In this document: positions 3,023 through 54,402 of the stretch, one piece after another
Layout: every line of letters begins with the position of its first letter
How positions within the stretch are numbered: the stretch's first letter is position 1
IMG/VR virus record: IMGVR_UViG_3300020477_000990
Coordinates: 62,001 to 126,000 of that record
DNA length: 64,000 nt
Strand: one strand, 5' to 3'
The notes under the pieces: model-generated
What the model saw: only the letters and a program-made list of their open reading frames with translations
What the model was told of the DNA's origin: nothing
Database searches by the model: none
Made by a program: the position numbers and the translations under genes

Positions 3023-4485
3023 CAGATGTAAAAGATTCAATATCAAAAGAAACTATTAGTACAGTTAACAAATTGTCCGAGTATAAGCATGGCTGGGCAA
3101 CTGATATAGATAGTGATAAAATTCCAAAAGGTTTAAATGAAGATACTATTAAGTTAATATCATTTAAAAAGAAAGAGCCACAATGGATGTTACAATGGAG
3201 GCTTGATGCATACAAAGTTTGGAAAACATTAAAAGAACCTAAATGGGCAAAAGTAGATTTACCAAAAATAGATTATCAAGATTTATATTATTATTCAGCA
3301 CCAAAAGGTTTTGAAAATAAACCTAAGTCTTTAGATGAGCTAGATCCAAAACTTTTAGAAACATATGAAAAGTTAGGGATACCATTGTCAGAACAAAAAG
3401 CATTAAATGGCATAGCCGTAGATGCCGTATTTGATAGTGTATCTGTTGCTACTACATTTAAAGAAGAATTAAAAAAAGCTGGAGTAATATTTTGTCCTAT
3501 ATCAGAAGCAATAAAAGAACATCCTGAGTTAGTTAGAAAATATTTAGGTACAGTAATACCAATATCAGATCATTTTTATTCAGCATTAAATTCAGCAGTA
3601 TTTACAGATGGGTCTTTTGTTTATATTCCACCAGGAGTTAAATGTCCAATGGAGTTATCCACATATTTTAGAATTAATGAAGCAAAGACTGGGCAGTTTG
3701 AACGTACTTTAATTATAGCTGACAAAGGTAGCTATGTAAGTTATTTAGAAGGATGTACAGCACCAATGCGTGATGAAAACCAATTACACGCCGCTAACGT
3801 AGAACTTATTGCTTTAGATGATGCAGAAATAAAATATTCCACAGTACAAAATTGGTATCCAGGAGATGAAAATGGAAAAGGTGGAATTTATAATTTAGTA
3901 ACTAAACGTGGTAAGTGTAAAGGAAAGAATTCAAAAATATCTTGGACGCAAGTAGAGACAGGGTCAGCAGTAACTTGGAAGTATCCAAGCTGTATATTAC
4001 AAGGAGATAATTCTAAAGGAGAGTTTTATTCTGTAGCAGTAACTAATAATTATCAACAAGCAGATACAGGAACTAAAATGATTCACATAGGTAAGAATAC
4101 AACAAGTAGAATTATTTCAAAAGGTATATCATTAGGTAAATCACAAAATACATATAGAGGACTAGTAAATGTATTAAAAAATTCTCGTAAGTCAAGAAAC
4201 TATACGCAATGTGATTCATTGTTAATAGGAGATGAATGTGGGGCTCATACTGTTCCATTTATTAGAAATAGAAATAAAACTTCTGTAGTTGAGCATGAAG
4301 CATCAACATCTAAGATTAGTGATGATCAATTATTTTATTTAATGCAACGAGGAATAAGTCAAGAAGAAGCAGTAAGTTTAATTGTCAATGGTTTCTGTAA
4401 AGAAGTTTTACAACAACTGCCAATGGAATTTGCAGTTGAGGCACAAAAGTTAGTTAGCATTAGTTTAGAAGGTAGTGTAGGGTAA
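3019..4485 (+). CDS. sufB: Fe-S cluster assembly scaffold SufB
   Basis: [72 protein letters not shown]. Confidence 0.97.
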
Positions 4486-32659: not shown

Positions 32660-32956
32660 ATGATAGGCGATAACTATAACAAGGTATTAGCTAATCATAT
32701 CTTCAATAGATTAGAAGAAATACAAACAGATGAGCATAGGATTCTAAATCAACCTAAATTATGGGCATCAGGCTTTCTTTTTACGGTAAATGACATTGAA
32801 AATATCATACAAGAAGTAAATAGTGCTAGTTTTGACGAAAGGGCATTATGGCACGACAAAATAAAACCCACAGAGGGCGACGTAAAGTCGGAAGTAAAAA
32901 AAGAAGAAACAGACGTAGACAAAGAAAGAAAAGAAGATAGTTCATATCTTGACTAA
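32660..32956 (+). CDS. Hypothetical protein
   Basis: ATG 32660 right after the upstream stop. Confidence 0.55.
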   Translation: MIGDNYNKVLANHIFNRLEEIQTDEHRILNQPKLWASGFLFTVNDIENIIQEVNSASFDERALWHDKIKPTEGDVKSEVKKEETDVDKERKEDSSYLD

Positions 32957-32977
32957 TCATATATTTTAAAGTATAAT
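32949..32977 (+). promoter_or_regulatory. Sigma70 promoter of the tmRNA gene, TTGACT-N17-TATAAT
   Basis: Near-consensus boxes. Confidence 0.8.
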
Positions 32978-32983
32978 TACTAT

Positions 32984-33228
32984 TGTAACGTTGAAGTTAT
33001 TGGAATAGATTATACGGACGTCGGGGCAGTACCGACCACCTCCACCAAAATTATACAAGTTTCGGGGGTGAACTAGGATCGACGGTAATTCGAAAGAATA
33101 ATGGAGTTGCCCGGATGTAAGCTCGGTTAACGCGAACACATTTACAAATGCAGATGAAAATCTAGCACTTGCGGCCTAGTTAATAGGCTAACGGGGTTGG
33201 CAAGTACCTGGCAACAGAAACTTGCCGT
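32984..33228 (+). ncRNA. ssrA: Circularly permuted two-piece tmRNA (alphaproteobacterial type), tag ADENLALAA
   Basis: Acceptor piece with T-arm GTCGG-GGCAGTA-CCGAC and CACCTCC-A-CCA (ends 33047); 16-nt intervening segment; coding piece starts GGGGGTGAACTAGGATCGAC (33064); G3.U70 pair; tag ORF 33150-33179; outer ends approximate. Confidence 0.92.
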
Positions 33229-36914: not shown

Positions 36915-36991
36915 GGCAGAGTAGCTCAGTTGGTTAGAGCGCCGGACTCATAAGCCGGAGGTCGCTGGTTCGATCCCAGCCTCTGCTACCA
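36915..36991 (+). tRNA. tRNA-Met(CAT), probably elongator
   Basis: Full cloverleaf, loop CTCATAA, encoded CCA; G1 paired, so not fMet; Ile2 not excluded. Confidence 0.9.
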
Positions 36992-38064: not shown

Positions 38065-38141
38065 CTGCCCGTAGCTCAGTTGGATAGAGCGTCAGTTTGC
38101 GGAACTGAAGGTCGGAAGTTCGACTCTTCCCGGGCAGGCCA
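38065..38141 (+). tRNA. tRNA-Arg(GCG)
   Basis: CTGCCCG/CGGGCAG acceptor; TCAGT-TTGCGGA-ACTGA anticodon arm; A20; encoded CCA. Confidence 0.88.
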
Positions 38142-38142
38142 T

Positions 38143-38216
38143 TGGAGCATAGCCAAGCGGTAAGGCATCGGTTTTTGGTACCGACATCCTAGGTTCGAAT
38201 CCTAGTGCTCCAGCCA
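38143..38216 (+). tRNA. tRNA-Gln(TTG)
   Basis: TGGAGCA/TGCTCCA acceptor; loop TTTTGGT; AGCCAAGCGGTAAGGC D-arm; CCA. Confidence 0.92.
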
Positions 38217-40257: not shown

Positions 40258-40344
40258 GCGGTCTTGGTGGAATTGGTAGACACGTTAGATTTAAAATTTA
40301 ATGTCCATTAGGACTTGGGGGTTCAAGTCCCTCAGACCGTACCA
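40258..40344 (+). tRNA. tRNA-Leu(TAA)
   Basis: GGTGGAATTGGTAGACAC D-arm, loop TTTAAAA, long variable arm, A73, CCA; TTGACA-N17-TATTAT upstream. Confidence 0.9.
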
Positions 40345-41710: not shown

Positions 41711-42361
41711 ATGCCATATTTTTTAAAAACATACAACAAAACTTTAGTGTATCATTTATGTCCAAAGAATGCTTGTACAACAATTGCTCATATGTTAATT
41801 CAAGCTGATGGTAATGGATATGTTAATGACACACATAAAGATTATTATATAGTGCATAGTTTATCTAATCCAAATAATAATTATGAGTATTGGACTAATT
41901 GTGATGCAGAAATTAAGTTAGCAGTTAAACGTGATCCAGTTAAACGTTTTGTTAGTGCATATAAAAATAGAATTGTGTATCATGATGATTTAAGTAAAGA
42001 TGAATATTTTGATAAAGCATTAGAAAAAGATTTTAAACCTTGGCCAATTTATAATAGATCATCAGATAAAACTATAAATGAGTTTATACAAAATTTTGAC
42101 AAGTATTGGGAAAATCCGTGGGTGCAAGGGCATTTTAAATCACAAACAACTTTCTTAGGAAAGCAAGATTATTATACACATATATTTGATATGTCTGAGT
42201 TAGATAAAGTACGAGACTTAATTGCTGAAGTATCTGGTAAAGAAATAGTATTACCTTGCTTACAAACAGGTGGAAATGATATTAGTGTAGACTTATCAGA
42301 AGATAGTATAAAATGGATTAATGATAGGTATGCTGAAGATTATGAAAACGGATGGTATTAA
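41711..42361 (+). CDS. Sulfotransferase family 2-like protein
   Basis: PKNACTT, RDPVKRFVSAY, HFKSQT. Confidence 0.8.
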   Translation: MPYFLKTYNKTLVYHLCPKNACTTIAHMLIQADGNGYVNDTHKDYYIVHSLSNPNNNYEYWTNCDAEIKLAVKRDPVKRFVSAYKNRIVYHDDLSKDEYFDKALEKDFKPWPIYNRSSDKTINEFIQNFDKYWENPWVQGHFKSQTTFLGKQDYYTHIFDMSELDKVRDLIAEVSGKEIVLPCLQTGGNDISVDLSEDSIKWINDRYAEDYENGWY

Positions 42362-43746
42362 ATACAAGTATGGAAAACATTAAAATAAATTTAGTTTGGG
42401 ATAACTGGTCTGATAAAGGACCTTTACCAAATGGGCTACATCCAAAATATATAAATGAATGGGAAACTAAATGGAAGGACAGATATGATATTAATGTTCT
42501 TACACGTTTTATTCCGTTAGATAGATATAATTTAGGATTTTTTCCTTTGCTATGCGATCAAGCTGGAATAGATATAACACATATAAAGCCAGAAGAAATA
42601 GGAGCAAATATTTCTAGTACACCTGATTGGTATGTAATGGAACCAAATCATATGGATCTATCATTGCTAACAGAAAATATGTTTGGTAATATAAATGAGC
42701 ATACTTTAAAAATGTTACGTGAAGGACAAACAAAACTAATATTGTATTATGCATATGAAGCCTTTCCAGTAAATCAAGTGAACTGGATTAATGTTATTGA
42801 AAGAAGTTTAGGCTGGCTTAAAATACCAAAAGAAAACTTTATATTAATATTTGGTGATCAAAAGTTTGATGAAAATTATCAAAAATATCTAGCATCTGGG
42901 CAAGGTCCTTTTTATGCTTATTACTTACAAAATGTTTTTGTGTATGATCATTTTGCTTGGGAGTTTTCAGATTATATTAAAAGTATGGTAATAGGAACTG
43001 AAAGAGAATCAAAAGAACTTGTTCCTATTGATGGTGATACAATGTATAAGCCAAGACCTAAAAAATTTTTATGTTTAAATGGTGGAGGTCGTCCACATAG
43101 AAAATGGCTAATGACAGAGTTAAAAAGAAATAATCTATTAGATCATGGAATAGTTAGTTATCTAAATAAATTTGATATACCATATGATCCAGCTGACTTT
43201 GTTTTTGTTCCAAGTGAAAAAGGTACTGGTGATACAGCATTGTTAGAAGCAGTTCGGTATCATCATGAGCATGGAAATGATATAAAAGAAATACAATTAG
43301 ATGTTGATCCTGTGCATGATGCTTGGCATAATAGAGGAATGACAGTACAACATTATAAAGATACATACTTTAATGTTACAACAGAAACATGGCCAGCTGA
43401 ACCTAGTTTCTTTGTTACTGAAAAATTATTTAAACCAATTATTAATATGCAACCTTTTATACTAGTAGGGCACCCTGGCTTATTAAAATATTTACATGAA
43501 GAAGGTTATGAAACATTTGATCAAATTTGGTTTGATGAGCATTATGATTCTATTCCTAACCATAAAGAACGTTTTTATCATGTAATGGAAAATATTAAAA
43601 ATGTTTGTGCATTAGATCAATCAGAGTTACAAAATATGTATGTTAAAGTATGGGATAAATTAAGACACAATCGAGAATTATTTTTAAAGAAAAATCATAC
43701 TAACTATTGGATTGAACTTATAAAAACAATGATAGAGATAAAATGA
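42352..43746 (+). CDS. Putative glycosyltransferase (C-terminus resembles GT10/GT-B)
   Basis: YFNVTTET...FVTEKLFKPI..QPFILVG motif. Confidence 0.45.
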   Translation: MVLNTSMENIKINLVWDNWSDKGPLPNGLHPKYINEWETKWKDRYDINVLTRFIPLDRYNLGFFPLLCDQAGIDITHIKPEEIGANISSTPDWYVMEPNHMDLSLLTENMFGNINEHTLKMLREGQTKLILYYAYEAFPVNQVNWINVIERSLGWLKIPKENFILIFGDQKFDENYQKYLASGQGPFYAYYLQNVFVYDHFAWEFSDYIKSMVIGTERESKELVPIDGDTMYKPRPKKFLCLNGGGRPHRKWLMTELKRNNLLDHGIVSYLNKFDIPYDPADFVFVPSEKGTGDTALLEAVRYHHEHGNDIKEIQLDVDPVHDAWHNRGMTVQHYKDTYFNVTTETWPAEPSFFVTEKLFKPIINMQPFILVGHPGLLKYLHEEGYETFDQIWFDEHYDSIPNHKERFYHVMENIKNVCALDQSELQNMYVKVWDKLRHNRELFLKKNHTNYWIELIKTMIEIK

Positions 43747-45014
43747 GTAACTATAAAGAAACTATAGATAAACTTGATAAAGATTTTGGTAAAACTTTTT
43801 GTATAAAACCTTTTACTGAAATATCAACGTCATCAGTTGGGCATATGAAATTATGTTGCTTTTCACAAAGCATTGGTAGTAATAATATGGCATATTATCA
43901 AGATAAATTTGAAAATGTTTTTCAAAATAATAATGATTTAATAACAATTAGAAAAGCAATGCTTGAAGGAAAAGCAATTAAAGAATGTCGTAATTGTTAT
44001 GTTGAAGAAAAAAATGGAAAAATATCTCAACGACAAGAAGAAAACTTTATAATGTATAATGAAAACAAAGAATTATTTAATAATATAATAAACAAAGGAA
44101 CAGCAATAGTAAAAAGTATTGATTTAAAGTTTGGTAACAAATGTAATTATGCCTGTATAATGTGTGATACAGGATCAAGCTCTTTACATTCAAAAGAAAT
44201 AGAAGCTAATCCACATCCTGATGATGTTAGAAAAGTAATAAATTTTGAACCATACTATTTTAATTTTCCTGATGAAAAAATGGATGATCTTTTATCAATA
44301 TCATCTAACTTGGGACGTGTTAAAAGTACAGGTGGAGAGCCATTTCTTTTAGATGGCTTTAAAGATTATATTAAAAAATTAGTTGACAACGGCTATGCTA
44401 AAAATATTGATTTTACAACGGTGTCAAATGGCACAGTTGATTGTACTGATCTTTTACCATATATGAATCAATTTAAATCATTTAGATTAAGATGGTCAAT
44501 TGATGGAACTGATAAAGTTTATAATTTTATTAGATACCCTGGTAGTTTTGATAGAATGAGTAGAGTACATAAAAAAATATCTGAAAGCATTATTAGTAAT
44601 AACTATACTAATGTTGAAGTTCAATTAGATCCTACAATACAATTGTTTAATGTGCATAACATAGTTGAGTTATTAAAATATGCAGAGTCTTTAAAAATAA
44701 TTAGTAGAGTAGAAATGGGGTACATTTATAAAGAACCTAGGTATTTAGATACATCATTAATGCCTATAGACATTTTACGCAATATATTTGATAGTGCTGA
44801 CAACGAAATTAAAAATATTAATGTAGTAAGCAATTATAATGATATTAAAGAACTTGCTTTTAAAAAGCATAATGAATATACAGAAAGTCAAAAGAAAGAT
44901 ATTTTTAATTTAACAAAAAGTATGGTTGCTTATTGGAAAAGAGTAAGAAAGTTAGAAGCTAAAGAGCATATTTCAACTTATGATAAACTAATAGAACATT
45001 ATTCTAAGATGTAA
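43743..45014 (+). CDS. N-terminal-twitch radical SAM protein
   Basis: FCIKPF..KLCC..CRNC; KFGNKCNYACIMC; TGGEPF; WSIDG. Confidence 0.85.
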   Translation: MSNYKETIDKLDKDFGKTFCIKPFTEISTSSVGHMKLCCFSQSIGSNNMAYYQDKFENVFQNNNDLITIRKAMLEGKAIKECRNCYVEEKNGKISQRQEENFIMYNENKELFNNIINKGTAIVKSIDLKFGNKCNYACIMCDTGSSSLHSKEIEANPHPDDVRKVINFEPYYFNFPDEKMDDLLSISSNLGRVKSTGGEPFLLDGFKDYIKKLVDNGYAKNIDFTTVSNGTVDCTDLLPYMNQFKSFRLRWSIDGTDKVYNFIRYPGSFDRMSRVHKKISESIISNNYTNVEVQLDPTIQLFNVHNIVELLKYAESLKIISRVEMGYIYKEPRYLDTSLMPIDILRNIFDSADNEIKNINVVSNYNDIKELAFKKHNEYTESQKKDIFNLTKSMVAYWKRVRKLEAKEHISTYDKLIEHYSKM

Positions 45015-45222
45015 TAAATCTTTTTGGTATTTTTTTATATTTCTTTTTAAATGCTTCTTCAAATCCTACTTCAGATTCTTCCGTTTCGTTATTGCCCCAT
45101 AATCTACCAAAGCATCTATCAGCCATAGACTCTATTTCTTCGTCAGTCCAATGTAATGGAATTAAATGTCCTTTGTCAATCCAAAGTAGCCTATTAGCTT
45201 CTTTAAATTGTTTCCAAGTCAT
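45004..45222 (-). CDS. Hypothetical protein
   Basis: 72-aa ORF, ATGA-coupled to the upstream peptide. Confidence 0.55.
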   Translation of the reverse strand: MTWKQFKEANRLLWIDKGHLIPLHWTDEEIESMADRCFGRLWGNNETEESEVGFEEAFKKKYKKIPKRFITS

Positions 45223-45353
45223 GATAATGGAGGCCAGTTATTGTATTCTGGATATTTTGATTTTCTTTTGTTAATTGCTTTAGTAGGTTTTGCTTTTTTA
45301 TTTCGTCCACCTGCCGTACGGTCAATTCTTCTAGGAGTCCTATTAGTAGACAT
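45219..45353 (-). CDS. 44-aa Lys/Arg-rich peptide not in the track (MSTNRTPRRIDRTAGGRNKKAKPTKAINKRKSKYPEYNNWPPLS)
   Basis: Upstream CTAAATA box on the - strand; ATGA overlap with the next gene. Confidence 0.55.
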   Translation of the reverse strand: MSTNRTPRRIDRTAGGRNKKAKPTKAINKRKSKYPEYNNWPPLS

Positions 45354-45419
45354 ATTCTTTTTAGAAGTCATATATTGTATTTAGTTTGGCCGGGAAAAAC
45401 CCCTGTATATTGTATTTTA

Positions 45420-45900
45420 TTTGTATGTGCGGTCAAATTTTTAGGAAGTCCTATTTTAATGTAAAACTCACTATCAAATCACTTCGTGATTTTCATATTC
45501 GTTTTCCCATTACAGTATGCCACCGTTCTTGACGCTGTTTCAGATAGCAAGTGGGGGTGCAAGAACAGATTCTCACTGGCTCTACTGCGACTTATCTTGT
45601 AGAGATATGATAGATGGCGAGTGGATGGATGTTGGGGCCTAATAGAACATATCTAAAGAGTAGAGACGTACTTGAGAATATTCTGACTCGATGGATGTAA
45701 TAAACTAATCTGAATTAAGCGGTTCTGACGGTAGTTTATGAAGTCCTAGAGTTGAATTGATGTGTCCCCTATAAAAATGAATATGAGTTAGAGCTGTTCT
45801 ATACGATCTTATATTGAAATACGATACGTCTACTACTTCTAGATAGCCGCCGAGGGGTAAAAATACCCCTGCGTTATGCGTAACTGGCGTTCCGCATACT
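45420..45900 (+). ncRNA. Candidate large structured RNA of unknown class
   Basis: ORF-free; about 41% GC over 45511-45900 by hand count; many nested and long-range complementarities; G.U pairs favour the + strand; boundaries uncertain. Confidence 0.5.
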
Positions 45901-46698
45901 TTATATGTATCTGTTAAATCCCCAGAATCGTTCGCGACACCACCAACACTCTTTGCAATGGAATTCCATGTTAGGGTCTTTCATGTATTCGACATCTCCA
46001 CCATTTTCACAACTTCTAGTAATAGGAAATAGCTCGTCTAGTATACCTTGACTTTTATATAATTCTGCTATAGATCTTTTATTAAAGTTTCTAAATGGTT
46101 GTTGCCAACACCAACCTTCTGCTTCTTCTAATTCTTCTGTAGTAGATCCTGTTTCGTATGTAACATCTGGATCTCTTTCATATAGATATGCCGCTTGATC
46201 CATTCTCATGTGTTTAATGCCATCATGATAATCTTCATATAATTCTCTTAGATCTTTAGGAGGATTAGCTGTCATACCATTAAAGAATATAACTCCGCGG
46301 CCTTCTGGATTGTTTTCTTGTGCTAAAATATTAGCTTCGTTTTCTTTTTGAGCTTTGTCATAGTTACTTAATCTAACTTGTTCATCTGAATCACTACCTA
46401 AATATGTTACTTCGTCAACTTTCATTTGGTTTTGACGTCTATCAGACATATCAATACCTGTAAGTTCTTGTATTTTATCACAGACTTTATTAGTATATCT
46501 AATGTGCCAATCTTTTGGAGGATATCCATTTGTTGTTGCTATAATTATTTTAAGATCTGGTCTTTCTTCTTTTTTATACTTTGCAATACAATATGCCATC
46601 ATAGCACTATCGGCACCACCTGACATTTTAAGTATGGCTGTATGATGATTGCTAGGTATATCTAAATTCCAATTTCCTTGTGGGGTAGTAAAAATCAT
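45901..46698 (-). CDS. QueC-like PP-loop ATPase (second paralog)
   Basis: MSGGADS; SC...CKECWWC; PFRNFNK..IA. Confidence 0.75.
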   Translation of the reverse strand: MIFTTPQGNWNLDIPSNHHTAILKMSGGADSAMMAYCIAKYKKEERPDLKIIIATTNGYPPKDWHIRYTNKVCDKIQELTGIDMSDRRQNQMKVDEVTYLGSDSDEQVRLSNYDKAQKENEANILAQENNPEGRGVIFFNGMTANPPKDLRELYEDYHDGIKHMRMDQAAYLYERDPDVTYETGSTTEELEEAEGWCWQQPFRNFNKRSIAELYKSQGILDELFPITRSCENGGDVEYMKDPNMEFHCKECWWCRERFWGFNRYI

Positions 46699-46701
46699 TT
46701 A

Positions 46702-47721
46702 TTATCCTAATATTTTCTTTACTCTTAATTCGTCTTGATCAGTAACTACATGAAATTCTATTCTATGTAGTAATCTTCTTTCTAATTTTTTCATTGTAAG
46801 TCCTGCAACGTCACCTTTAACATCAGTACGTCTATGGATACAGTTAACTTGGTCCATATATAATATATCGCCATCGTCCCATATATGATCATATATGTAA
46901 TCTTCTTGTACATAATTGTCCATAAAGTAATTTTTAAAATCAATGAACTCACTAGTAGACGCACCTATAATTTCTGTTACTTGTGATGGAGAAAAGTGTA
47001 CACCTTCTTTACCATTAGTACAAATTGCTACTAAAGGTTTAACTTTATTCATAAGGTGGTCTCCACCATGACCAAATTCTATATTTCTATAACTTTCATC
47101 TACGTCTGGGATAATACCTTCTTCACCATCAACAAAGCCCCAACGTACTTGAGTGTTACGCATCCAAAATTTATGTTCAGCACTTTCTTTTTCAAACCTA
47201 TCAATAGTTTGACATACTTGAGTAACTGAACCTGTAGTTCCTTCTACACCTTGTAAGCCAACAAACTCTGGTAATGGTCTTTCAATGTAACCTTTAATTG
47301 ATTTATTACCTGGTAAGTAAAAAGGAATTTTATCACGTAATGATTCTGCATTGTGCCAATTTAATCTTTTACTAAAGCCTGCGGCAACACCTTCATATGA
47401 TGTACCTTTTTTATTAGACCATTTTTTCTTTGCTGTTACTTTGTCAAGTCCAGGATATATCGGACAACCGTCTTCATCATAGTAACCAGTAAGGTGTTTA
47501 GTTGGAACATCTTTCTTTTGTCCATGAGTTGCTACTGTACCTAATAAACCTGATAGTTCATAAAATTGTTCTACATTAAAATTAACTTTTTTAAGAGCTA
47601 CAACTAATTCTTGTTTTAGTAAGTGTGCAAGGTCATGTACGTCTTGATAGTTGAAAGGATATTTTAATCCTGTAACTTTAACACCATATTTTCCAAATAG
47701 TTTTTTCTTTTGTACTTTCAT
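46702..47721 (-). CDS. TauD-like Fe/2OG enzyme with HxA motif
   Basis: WHNAES in place of WHND; HIWDDGDILYMDQVNCIHRR. Confidence 0.78.
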   Translation of the reverse strand: MKVQKKKLFGKYGVKVTGLKYPFNYQDVHDLAHLLKQELVVALKKVNFNVEQFYELSGLLGTVATHGQKKDVPTKHLTGYYDEDGCPIYPGLDKVTAKKKWSNKKGTSYEGVAAGFSKRLNWHNAESLRDKIPFYLPGNKSIKGYIERPLPEFVGLQGVEGTTGSVTQVCQTIDRFEKESAEHKFWMRNTQVRWGFVDGEEGIIPDVDESYRNIEFGHGGDHLMNKVKPLVAICTNGKEGVHFSPSQVTEIIGASTSEFIDFKNYFMDNYVQEDYIYDHIWDDGDILYMDQVNCIHRRTDVKGDVAGLTMKKLERRLLHRIEFHVVTDQDELRVKKILG

Positions 47722-48755
47722 TAAACCATAACCTCTAATCTATTTAATAAACGTTCTTCTAACGCAGTCATATCTAAACCATCAACAGCATAATTCATAT
47801 CTGTTCTTCTATGCATACAAGTAATTTGATCCATATAAAATATATCACCATCTTGCCATACATGATCATAGATATATTCTGGAGTAACATACTCATCCAT
47901 AATTCTTTGTTTAAGTTCTTTCCATTGATTTGATGCTACATAATCTTCAGCTAATATTTTTTTATGTTCATCATCGTATAATATTTTAGTAGTACCATCA
48001 GCAATTTCATTTGATATATCAACAACTTGACTAGGAGTAAATCTTAAACCTTCTTTACCATTTGGAGCAACTTGTACTAATGGTTGTTGTTTAATGTTTA
48101 ATTTAATAGCATCTTTATATTTGTCCATATCTTCTTTAGTTGACATTTCATCAGTACCATGAATATCATCATAACCTTCTTCACCTGGTTTAGGTAAGTC
48201 TGGCATAATACCTTCATCACCTGGAACTACACCCCAAAGTACATTTAATTTTTTTAATAGTTCTTTGTTTTCTTGAGGTTCTTTTTCAAATCTATCTATC
48301 ATTTGGCATACTTGAGTAATACTACCTGTTGTTCCTTTAACTCCTTGTAGTCCTACAAAGTTTGCCGCAGGATTAGTACTATCAGTTTCATTGTTATGCC
48401 AATTTAATCTTTTAGAAATACCAGTAGGCATTCCAGCATATCTTCCTTCTTTTGTTTTCTTTGCTGTTACTTTCCACATACCAGGAAGTATAGTTTTACC
48501 TTCATCATCTAAATAGCCAGTCCAACCAGTTGGTTCTGGGATACCTGCTTGTAATCCAAATGTGCTAATTTTACCTAGGCGTCCTGTAAGCTCATAATAC
48601 TGCTTTGCTGTATAGTTAATTTTAGGTAACACTACAACTAGTTCGTTAGTTAGCAATTTTTTAAGCTCAGCTATTTCGCCCCATTTAAATGGATATGAAA
48701 GCTCTGTTACAGATGCCCCCATATTTCCAAATCCTTTGAGTGGTGATACTTTCAT
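47721..48755 (-). CDS. TauD-like Fe/2OG enzyme with HxN motif
   Basis: WHNNETD; HVWQDGDIFYMDQITCMHRR. Confidence 0.78.
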   Translation of the reverse strand: MKVSPLKGFGNMGASVTELSYPFKWGEIAELKKLLTNELVVVLPKINYTAKQYYELTGRLGKISTFGLQAGIPEPTGWTGYLDDEGKTILPGMWKVTAKKTKEGRYAGMPTGISKRLNWHNNETDSTNPAANFVGLQGVKGTTGSITQVCQMIDRFEKEPQENKELLKKLNVLWGVVPGDEGIMPDLPKPGEEGYDDIHGTDEMSTKEDMDKYKDAIKLNIKQQPLVQVAPNGKEGLRFTPSQVVDISNEIADGTTKILYDDEHKKILAEDYVASNQWKELKQRIMDEYVTPEYIYDHVWQDGDIFYMDQITCMHRRTDMNYAVDGLDMTALEERLLNRLEVMV

Positions 48756-54328: not shown

Positions 54329-54402
54329 GGCTCTATAGTTCAATGGTAGAACGCAACTTTCAGGTGGTTGAAATTCGGGTTCAATCCCCGGTAGAGCTAC
54401 CA
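54329..54402 (+). tRNA. tRNA with CAG anticodon (Leu by anticodon) but a short 4-nt variable loop
   Basis: GGCTCTA/TAGAGCT acceptor, A73, CCA; CAACT-TTCAGGT-GGTTG anticodon arm; TCGGG-TTCAATC-CCCGG T-arm. Confidence 0.8.

What the first reader, a model, noticed from the sequence alone, without database searches (positions are those of the whole stretch)
45420..45900. About 480-nt GC-rich, ORF-free, multi-stem region: candidate new large ncRNA
Seen: about 41% GC (hand count, 45511-45900), far above other intergenic DNA here. Pairings: AGTATGC 45514-20/GCATACT 45894-900; GTTCTTG 45525-31/CAAGAAC 45560-66; CTCTAC 45580-85/GTAGAG 45599-604; GACGTA 45665-70/TACGTC 45825-30; ATAGAACA 45642-49/TGTTCTAT 45795-802 (crosses the previous pair, so a pseudoknot or alternative fold); ATAAACTA 45700-07/TAGTTTAT 45732-39; AGGGGTA-AAAA-TACCCCT 45853-70. 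G.U closures favour the + strand. It does not match RNase P, SRP, tmRNA or intron consensus by eye. A compact phage genome rarely keeps 0.5 kb non-coding without function.
Basis: partly seen in the sequence, partly recalled or inferred. Interest (0 to 1): 0.75.

Follow-up and report, generated by a model that had tools for sequence, protein, structure and literature searches.

The report
Conserved non-coding element of marine jumbo phages
The flagged stretch is a real, roughly 510-base non-coding element kept almost unchanged across a family of uncultured marine jumbo phages. It is most likely a new phage RNA gene of unknown function, but the multi-stem fold proposed for it is mostly not supported.

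Summary
The literal observation holds: 41.5% GC against 31% for the window, no conserved ORF, and all seven pairings present. The fold is weak. MFE z is -1.5 (+) and -3.1 (-), local z is about 0 on both strands in 10 homologues, and only 2 of the 7 pairings survive in homologues.

The conservation is what stands out. The block 45397-45906 recurs in about 40 marine metagenome and virome contigs at 76-100% nucleotide identity. The adjacent QueC-like protein is only 60% identical. The block sits between 4 different upstream and at least 9 different downstream gene families. It is absent from 185,579 bacterial and archaeal species genomes, from GenBank phages and from Rfam 15. Variable sites show no codon periodicity. 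A diverged clade (L062, L082) keeps only the two ends and the length. A few base pairs truly covary.

Short contigs from marine metatranscriptomes fall on the element and not on its neighbours.

The 5' motif TATATTGTAT-N5-TTGTATGTGCGG recurs in this genome only as a five-copy array ahead of a second ORF-free 1-kb stretch.

Best reading: an independently transcribed phage ncRNA, probably on the + strand, with little structure. The strand and the function remain unresolved.

The parts
45397..45906 (.). Whole conserved non-coding element
   Evidence: Aligned at 76-100% identity in 26 distinct full-length copies. 257 of 516 positions are invariant in 22 sequences. The flanks diverge immediately outside this block.
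45406..45432 (+). Head motif TATATTGTAT-TTTAT-TTGTATGTGCGG: two TTGTAT half-sites 11 bp apart; candidate promoter or operator
   Evidence: Conserved in all clades, including the diverged clade C. TGTATKTGCG occurs in the 328-kb genome only here and five times in an array at about 140 kb.
45433..45516 (+). Near-invariant AT-rich block
   Evidence: Column identity is 0.94-1.00. It contains sigma-70-like sites that read on the - strand: 45465-45437 and 45436-45409.
45476..45492 (+). Hairpin AAATCAC-TTC-GTGATTT
   Evidence: Invariant stem; the loop varies in L030. Clade C has a different hairpin (AAGGGC-loop-GCCCTT) at the same place, and its loop differs between L062 and L082.
45522..45538 (+). 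Hairpin ACCGT...RCGGT after the conserved CCACCGT block
   Evidence: 5 bp in 'type 2' copies and weakened in 'type 1' copies. Clade C keeps CACCGT/ACGGTG with a longer loop.
45583..45623 (+). Helix TACTGC (45583-88) / GCGAGTG (45617-23) enclosing the small variable hairpin 45593-45607
   Evidence: RNAalifold pairs 190-195/225-231 show U.G, U-A and C-G at one pair and G-C or G.U at another. The inner hairpin differs in sequence between copies (TATCT/AGATA, TCCAT/ATGGA).
45658..45673 (+). Hairpin GAGTA-GAGACG-TACTT
   Evidence: 3 invariant pairs. The two end pairs switch between Watson-Crick and G.U on the + strand in several lineages (pairs 268/283 and 272/279).
45680..45757 (+). Central long irregular hairpin, including the invariant ATATTCTGACTCGATGGATG
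   Evidence: Predicted on both strands. Compensatory changes occur at AAACT/AGTTT (L041: GAAT/ATTC) and at GAA/TTC to GGA/TCC (3 sequences).
45766..45770 (+). CCCCT, 5' arm of a possible long-range helix with AGGGG at 45853-45857
   Evidence: The partner of the invariant AGGGG varies: CCCCT, CCTCT, CTTCT, AGGCCCCT (an 8-bp match in L013) and TTAGGC/GCCTAA in the L011 type.
45832..45847 (.). Hairpin H1 (ACTAC-TTCTAG-ATAGC), the best covarying helix
   Evidence: Pair types are GC 13, AU 8, UA 1 with no break. The next pair is UA 21, AU 1 (columns 453/462 and 452/463). This was the top mutual-information pair.
45846..45857 (.). Invariant GCCGCCGAGGGG
   Evidence: Identical in clades A and B. Clade C has GCCGCCGAGC / GCCGCCGAAC.
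45853..45906 (+). Two terminal hairpins (45853-70 and 45875-98) followed by CTTTATAT; terminator-like on the + strand and overlapping the QueC-like stop codon
   Evidence: Other clades carry unrelated hairpins here, each followed by a U-rich tract on the + strand only. A terminator-like site was called in L019 on that strand.
45901..46698 (-). Flanking QueC-like gene, convergent with a + strand RNA
   Evidence: Pfam QueC and PHROG QueC-like. It is 60% identical to the L004 homologue, while the element is 88% identical.
45219..45371 (-). Flanking 50-aa basic ORF, divergent from a + strand RNA
   Evidence: Its first 29 aa are 90% identical to sequence just beyond the element in L041.

Best explanation
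The block 45397-45906 is a self-contained non-coding gene of a family of uncultured marine jumbo phages.

It is most likely transcribed on the + strand as an RNA of about 470-500 nt. Transcription would start at or just after the conserved head motif (45406-45432) and end at the hairpin and U-tract at 45853-45906, which abuts the stop codon of the convergent upstream gene.

The RNA is not a compact, ornate fold. It has an invariant AT-rich 5' part of about 110 nt, one long irregular central hairpin, several short hairpins whose sequences vary, and long conserved stretches that appear single-stranded.

I infer, without having shown it, that it acts in trans through those conserved sequences, as a binding platform or decoy for a phage or host factor. 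I also infer that the head motif is a dedicated promoter or operator, shared with a second non-coding unit at about 140 kb in the same genome.

Shown: conservation, the non-coding nature, a few real base pairs, and presence in RNA libraries. Inferred: the strand, the transcript ends, trans action and the partner.
For: Conservation beyond the neighbours. The element is 88% identical to L004 over 496 nt, where the adjacent protein is 60% identical and the other flank is unrelated. It is 80% identical to L011 and 76% to L013. There are 33 further metagenome loci and 26 distinct full-length copies, with long invariant blocks.

Context. 4 upstream and at least 9 downstream gene families flank the element.

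Not coding. Variable sites fall 89/83/87 by codon phase, there are stops in all frames, and no ORF is conserved.

Base pairing. H1 shows GC/AU/UA covariation. Compensatory changes occur in the central hairpin and in small hairpins. Clade C keeps hairpins at the same places with different sequences.

RNA libraries. 9 marine metatranscriptome runs hold part of the element. In 4 runs laid on 1.3 kb, all 5 contigs lie within 45397-45799 and none lies on the flanks.

Evidence for the + strand.
- Three or four unrelated hairpin and U-tract versions sit at the same end, on the + strand only.
- In L062 the upstream gene has its own terminator, a five-pair G-C stem followed by seven Ts, between the gene and the element.
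- The + strand has G>C, like coding strands in this genome.
- The layout of motif, ORF-free stretch and hairpin is repeated at the 140-kb locus.
Against: Structure. Folding energy is no better than shuffles. The alignment-shuffle z is only -1.7 (+) and -2.4 (-). The RNAalifold covariation term is about -2 kcal/mol on either strand. Watson-Crick covariation is not more frequent than control rules: 63 against 67, 62 and 56.

Wobble evidence that favours the - strand.
- H1 is flanked by G.U pairs only on the - strand, and clade C turns one of them into U-A.
- Clade C changes in the next hairpin and in a GCGG/CCGC closing helix keep pairing only on the - strand.

Transcript evidence. Two contigs include the motif itself, and one runs 129 nt past it, which a start after the motif does not explain. 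The contigs are short, have depth 2-4, carry no strand, and only about 2 independent ones come from this phage type.

No partner protein is known. The genome encodes no reverse transcriptase and no Ro60.
Confidence: 0.45

Rival explanations
1. The RNA is made from the - strand. It would be co-directional with the gene that always precedes it, either as a long processed 3' UTR-derived RNA or as a leader and promoter region for the gene that follows.
For: In every locus with an upstream flank, the upstream gene points into the element and ends within about 18 nt of it. The MFE z is better on the - strand (-3.1 against -1.5; alignment z -2.4 against -1.7). Several pairs wobble as G.U only on the - strand, namely the H1 flanks, the outer pairs of the next hairpin in clade C, and a GCGG/CCGC closing helix. 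Sigma-70-like sites inside the invariant block read towards the downstream gene. One metatranscriptome contig runs from inside the element 129 nt into the downstream flank.
Against: In L062 a strong terminator separates the upstream gene from the element, with no room for a promoter after it. No U-tract follows the hairpins on the - strand. The downstream gene differs in family, and in about a third of loci it is on the opposite strand, so a leader role cannot be general. The - strand has C>G, unlike sense strands in this genome.
Confidence: 0.25
2. The element works mainly as DNA. It could be a replication origin or a regulatory or recombination module. In that case the motif is a protein-binding iteron, the AT-rich block is an unwinding region, and any transcript is a primer (as in T7, T4 and ColE1 origins) or a by-product.
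For: The head motif consists of two direct TTGTAT half-sites one helical turn apart. It recurs only as a five-copy tandem array followed by AT-rich DNA at about 140 kb. An AT-rich invariant block directly follows the motif, and the stretch after it is G-rich on the + strand. Sequence conservation is extreme while evidence for RNA structure is weak. Both loci lie where gene orientation switches. The shuffled flanks fit a recombination boundary.
Against: Real compensatory base-pair changes (H1, the central hairpin) are not expected of protein-binding DNA. 500 bp of near-identity is far more than known phage origins need. Genes converge on the element rather than diverge from it. Pieces of its interior appear in RNA libraries.
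Confidence: 0.2
3. The element is a recently spread selfish or mobile DNA segment, or a decayed gene, and has no function of its own.
For: It is found in many different gene neighbourhoods and is absent from relatives whose flanking genes are 58-63% identical. Copies such as L019 and L025 are recombinants, with a clade A body and a clade B 3' end.
Against: Invariant blocks alternate with saturated variable blocks, which is selection and not recent spread. Clade C has diverged almost completely inside yet keeps the ends, the length and the hairpin positions. There are no terminal inverted repeats, no target duplications and no transposase. There is no codon periodicity and no residual ORF.
Confidence: 0.05

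Closest known systems
GOLLD and ROOL (also OLE, raiA): large bacterial and phage-associated ncRNAs of unknown function (PMC5737381, PMC12286853)
   Same: They are several hundred nucleotides long, non-coding, often carried by phages or prophages, found by conservation in metagenomes, and of unknown function.
   Different: No covariance-model match was found. Those RNAs are 'ornate', with many covarying helices and pseudoknots. This element shows few covarying pairs, ordinary folding energy, and conservation mainly at the sequence level.
Protein-titrating RNAs such as 6S RNA or CsrB/RsmZ (from my own knowledge)
   Same: They are abundant trans-acting RNAs that work through repeated or conserved binding sites. 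Here, short motifs recur within the element: AAGTCCTA twice, CCTACTGC twice, and TAGAGTTGAA twice in clade B.
   Different: GGA motifs are not enriched: 5.8 per 450 nt, with only 2 conserved. There is no 6S-like open-promoter mimic and no Rfam match. No partner is known.
Transcript-primed origins: the tandem promoters plus AT-rich region of the phage T7 primary origin, the promoter plus unwinding element of T4 oriF/oriG, and ColE1 RNA II of about 550 nt (from my own knowledge)
   Same: A promoter-like motif, tandem at the second locus, is followed by AT-rich DNA and then by a transcript that is G-rich relative to C. The size is like that of RNA II.
   Different: No initiation has been mapped. 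Genes converge on the element. Nothing was found that plays the part of RNA I. The conservation extends over the whole 500 nt.
PeSL 'promoter-early stem-loop' cassettes of T4-type phages, which are mobile regulatory cassettes at the borders of shuffled genes (from my own knowledge)
   Same: A conserved non-coding cassette with promoter-like and stem-loop parts lies between accessory genes that are shuffled among related phages.
   Different: Those cassettes are tens of bases long and occur many times per genome. This element is about 510 nt and single-copy.

Membership tests
Any Rfam 15 family (including GOLLD, ROOL, HEARO, OLE, raiA, group I and II introns, RNase P, 6S, SRP, tmRNA, riboswitches) | Scores at or near the family covariance model's gathering threshold | tested here: not met
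   There was no match in 45000-46300 even at E<=10, and none within the element in the homologues L013, L041 and L004 at E<=5.
Ornate large structured ncRNA (GOLLD/ROOL-like kind) | Many helices supported by covariation | tested here: not met
   On the + strand 7 of 77 predicted pairs have two-sided changes, and on the - strand 4 of 78. The covariation term is about -2 kcal/mol. Watson-Crick covariation equals the control rules.
Ornate large structured ncRNA (GOLLD/ROOL-like kind) | Folding clearly more stable than shuffled sequence | tested here: not met
   z is -1.46 (+) and -3.13 (-) for the window copy. The local mean z is -0.28 and -0.21 over 10 homologues. Clade C copies give -1.3 to -2.6.
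Independent non-coding RNA gene | Transcribed as a discrete RNA | tested here: inconclusive
   Metatranscriptome contigs lie on the element and not on its flanks. They are few, short, shallow and carry no strand.
Independent non-coding RNA gene | Own promoter and terminator | tested here: inconclusive
   The head motif is conserved, and a hairpin plus U-tract sits at the other end in all clades. No consensus sigma-70 promoter was called on the + strand at the motif in the window.
Protein-coding gene | Conserved open frame and a three-base periodicity of substitutions | tested here: not met
   There are stops in all six frames. The small ORFs differ between copies. Variable sites fall 89/83/87 by phase, p=0.90.
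Group II intron | 5' GUGYG, domain V, an intron-encoded reverse transcriptase, and interruption of a host gene | tested here: not met
   GTGCG is present at 45427-45431, but there is no match to the Rfam intron models and no reverse transcriptase in the genome. The flanking genes are complete and differ between loci.
CsrB/RsmZ-type sponge RNA | Many GGA motifs, mostly in hairpin loops | tested here: not met
   GGA occurs 5.8 times per 450 nt, about the random expectation, and only 2 copies are conserved.
Transcript-primed or iteron-type replication origin | Repeated protein-binding sites or promoters next to an AT-rich unwinding region | tested here: inconclusive
   There is one motif copy here and five at about 140 kb, each followed by AT-rich DNA. 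No replication data exist.
Transposable or homing element | Terminal repeats, target-site duplication, or a linked mobility gene | tested here: not met
   No terminal inverted repeat was found. It is single-copy in the genome. The neighbours are metabolic genes, with no transposase or endonuclease.

The most novel reading that the evidence does not exclude
Marine jumbo phages carry a previously undescribed class of about 0.5-kb RNA that is conserved almost to the nucleotide yet only sparsely structured. It would be driven by a dedicated two-half-site promoter or operator that the same genome uses only once more, for a second non-coding unit of about 1 kb. Such a pair would point to a phage-specific RNA-based function that works by sequence recognition rather than by an ornate fold, for example titration of a host factor, counter-defence, or R-loop priming of replication.
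Probability: 0.35. Interest if true: 0.75.

Novelty: new member of a known kind. Interest (0 to 1): 0.55.

Why it matters
Jumbo phages are abundant in the ocean, and their non-coding genes are almost unstudied. This element is better conserved than the proteins around it. It keeps its place while its neighbours are shuffled, and it occurs in samples from many ocean surveys, so selection on it is strong.

If it is an RNA, it adds a family to the short list of large phage RNAs with unknown roles. It would be an unusual one, because sequence is conserved rather than fold. If it is an origin or regulatory module, it would give a first handle on replication or transcription control in this uncultured phage group.

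Either way, the conserved 20-30-nt blocks are ready-made probes and markers for this phage family in metagenomes and metatranscriptomes.

Tried and rejected
- Rfam at gathering and at permissive thresholds, on the window and on three homologues: no match to the element itself.
- ARAGORN: no tRNA or tmRNA here.
- GenBank phages, blastn with the element: no match.
- GTDB species genomes, two exact-pattern scans: no match.
- IMG/VR scans with gapped anchors: only chance hits in unrelated GC-rich phages.
- Literature search with sequence strings: no paper.
- Coding: rejected on stops, lack of conserved ORFs and lack of periodicity.
- CsrA-type sponge: rejected on GGA counts.
- Partner search in the genome: no reverse transcriptase and no Ro60.
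- Paralogue search with an nhmmer profile: only the motif recurs.
- Strand decision: none of the following separated the strands. I tried RNAalifold on both strands, averaged pair probabilities, helix clustering, mutual information, control pairing rules, and wobble counts around strand-neutral cores.
- A possible second motif copy in G001 turned out to lie in coding sequence, so it is a chance match.
- I did not run the count of structure pairs on the full alignment, because it would have required typing a 532-character structure string.

Full report
**Where the finding lies.** The window is positions 62001-126000 of a 328,149-bp virus record with direct terminal repeats and 31.8% GC. This is a jumbo phage. 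It also carries an alpha-type two-piece tmRNA and five tRNAs in the window.

The flagged stretch lies between two genes on the - strand. One is a QueC-like gene (45901-46698). The other is a 50-aa basic ORF (45219-45371), followed by a 72-aa ORF. Radical-SAM and TauD-type genes lie nearby.

**Check of the observation.**
- The GC content of 45511-45900 is 41.5%, against 31.2% for the window.
- All seven quoted pairings are exact.
- Every frame on both strands is broken by many stops.
- Short inverted repeats are somewhat enriched. Seven-mers number 13 against 4.5+-2.8 in dinucleotide shuffles. Eight-mers number 2 against 1.3.
- The minimum free energy is not remarkable: z is -1.46 on + and -3.13 on -.
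- Nothing in Rfam 15 matches, even at E<=10, and no tRNA or tmRNA is found.

**Homologues change the picture.** Relatives of the QueC-like protein led to contig L004. There the protein is 60% identical, yet the 496 nt after its stop codon are 88% identical to the window, and the far flank is unrelated. Other relatives of the same protein (L006-L009) have only a 73-nt spacer at that place.

Exact-word scans then found the element in three IMG/VR contigs and in 33 metagenome contigs. This gave 26 distinct full-length copies. Further copies came from contigs that encode relatives of a neighbouring radical-SAM gene.

The element is absent from GenBank phages and from one genome of each of 185,579 bacterial and archaeal species. 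The nearest cultured relatives of the linked PhoH gene are jumbo phages of the PA5oct and Atu_ph07 types, at 43-52% identity.

**Pattern of conservation.** In 22 aligned copies, 257 of 516 window positions are invariant. Blocks such as 45437-45516 and 45677-45696 are essentially unchanged, while other blocks are saturated with changes. Variable sites fall 89/83/87 over the three codon phases (p=0.90), and the small ORFs differ between copies. The element is therefore not coding.

The copies fall into three clades:
- clade A, the window type;
- clade B, the majority;
- clade C (L062 and L082), which shares only the head motif, the CCACCGT block, the 3' module and the overall length. Clade C has different hairpins at matching places.

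**Neighbours.** The gene before the element (read in the - direction) always points into it and ends within about 18 nt of it. That gene belongs to one of four families: PhoH, the QueC-like family, and two unknown families. The gene after the element belongs to at least nine families and lies on either strand. These include two radical-SAM types, a SET-domain protein, a folate-binding GCV_T-like protein and a DAO oxidoreductase. More distant relatives of the radical-SAM gene (59-63% identity) lack the element. The element is single-copy in its genome.

**Is it a structured RNA?** Only weakly.
- RNAalifold gives 77 pairs on + (-44.5 kcal/mol, covariation term -1.85) and 78 pairs on - (-39.0 kcal/mol, covariation term -2.09). 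Two-sided changes occur at 7 and 4 pairs respectively.
- Alignment-shuffle z-scores are -1.7 (+) and -2.4 (-).
- Local z-scores over ten homologues average about 0 on both strands.
- Perfect Watson-Crick covariation between variable columns (63 pairs) is no more common than under three control rules (67, 62, 56). Within clade B the counts are 4 against 1, 1 and 2.

Several helices are nonetheless convincing or plausible:
- Hairpin H1 (45832-45847) has pair types GC 13, AU 8 and UA 1, with no break.
- The central long hairpin (45680-45757) has compensatory changes at AAACT/AGTTT and at GAA/TTC.
- A small hairpin at 45593-45607 changes sequence but not shape.
- The terminal hairpins differ completely between clades.
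- The invariant AGGGG (45853-57) can pair with a partner that varies: CCCCT, CCTCT, CTTCT or AGGCCCCT.

**Transcription.** Nine marine metatranscriptome runs hold part of the element. Four of them were laid on 45000-46300. All five contigs lie between 45397 and 45799 and none lies on the flanks. Three of them match the window's variable part at 99-100%. Two come from relatives.

This fits an RNA that is more abundant than the neighbouring mRNAs, but the evidence is thin. The contigs are about 167-256 nt long, of depth 2-4, and carry no strand. Two of them come from one sample. Two contigs include the head motif, and one continues 129 nt beyond it.

**The head motif and a second locus.** The element starts on the + strand with TATATTGTAT-TTTAT-TTGTATGTGCGG (45406-45432), which holds two TTGTAT half-sites 11 bp apart. 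In the whole 328-kb genome the second half-site, TGTATKTGCG, occurs only here and five times in a tandem array at 139,970-140,160 on the - strand. Read in the motif's direction, that array is followed by:
- AT-rich DNA;
- about 1 kb without an ORF longer than 48 aa;
- a strong hairpin.

That stretch has no Rfam match, and traces of it appear in three metatranscriptome runs. Both loci therefore share one layout: divergent gene, motif, ORF-free stretch, hairpin, convergent gene. This suggests a dedicated promoter or operator, or alternatively an iteron.

**Which strand?** The evidence for + is as follows.
- At the end next to the upstream gene, clades A, B, C and L041 carry unrelated hairpins. 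Each is followed by a U-rich tract on the + strand only. The scan tool calls one of these in L019.
- In L062 the upstream gene has its own terminator, a five-pair G-C stem followed by seven Ts, before the element begins. Read-through from that gene is therefore unlikely.
- G exceeds C on the + strand, as on sense strands throughout this genome.
- The motif layout at the two loci points the same way.

The evidence for - is as follows.
- The fold statistics are slightly better on -.
- The H1 flanks are G.U only on -, and clade C turns one of them into U-A.
- Two further clade C changes, and a GCGG/CCGC closing helix, keep pairing only on -.
- One contig runs past the motif.

Wobble counts around strand-neutral helix cores do not decide the matter: 729 against 608. 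I put + at about 0.6.

**Verdict.** The finding is real and more interesting than a GC-rich gap, but not for the reason given. It is a strongly selected, non-coding, single-copy module of a family of marine jumbo phages. It is new to Rfam and, as far as my searches reach, to the literature.

The best-supported reading is a new phage RNA gene with modest structure, acting through conserved sequence. A - strand RNA and a DNA-level role (origin, operator or recombination boundary) remain live alternatives.

It is not a member of GOLLD, ROOL or any other described family. It also fails the 'ornate structured RNA' criteria that I tested.

Noticed in passing
Outside the window: G000:C1 about 138,980-140,160 (L002 about 350-1530, - strand): Five tandem copies of the element's head motif are followed by AT-rich DNA, about 1 kb with no ORF longer than 48 aa, and a strong hairpin (GGCCC-CGTA-GGGCC). 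There is no Rfam match. Three metatranscriptome runs hold 5-6% of its words. This may be a second non-coding unit, or an origin, under the same control.
   Followed up: partly
window 32937-33228; 36915-36988; 38065-38213; 40258-40341; 54329-54399: The phage carries an alphaproteobacterial-type two-piece (permuted) tmRNA gene and five tRNA genes. This hints at an alphaproteobacterial host.
   Followed up: no
window 45219-45371 (-) and L041 7404-7490: The first 29 residues of the 50-aa, very basic ORF next to the element are 90% identical to sequence at the start of a longer gene in the same position in L041. The window ORF may be a remnant, or a shared basic N-terminal tail.
   Followed up: partly
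L006 1408-1480 and L009 1938-2010: Relatives that lack the element have a 73-nt spacer after the QueC-like gene, with a perfect TTGACA-17-TATAAT promoter. These phages therefore use host-type promoters for at least some genes.
   Followed up: no
L019 and L025 (elements at about 3611-4129 and 2037-2554): These are recombinant copies. The body of the element is clade A, while the 3' hairpin module is that of clade B. A two-site polymorphism (GACGCTGT against AACGCGGT, window 45531-45538) is also spread across both clades, which points to exchange between copies.
   Followed up: partly
window 45442-45451 (metatranscriptome run X1, contig 1): One RNA-library contig from a more distant relative has five clustered changes in the otherwise invariant TAGGAAGTCCTA. 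They create a different small hairpin (GCC-GAA-GGC) about 1.5 nt away. More divergent family members therefore exist in the ocean than the exact-word scans recovered.
   Followed up: no
window 42352-48755: The element sits in a cluster of accessory metabolic genes: a SPASM-type radical-SAM gene (43743-45014), the QueC-like gene, and two tandem TauD-type dioxygenase paralogues (46702-47721 and 47721-48755). Related phages place PhoH, SET-domain, GCV_T-like and DAO genes at the same spot.
   Followed up: partly
window 45371-45380 (+): A second, partial copy of the first half of the motif (ATATATTGTAT) overlaps the start codon of the 50-aa ORF, 35 nt before the full motif.
   Followed up: no
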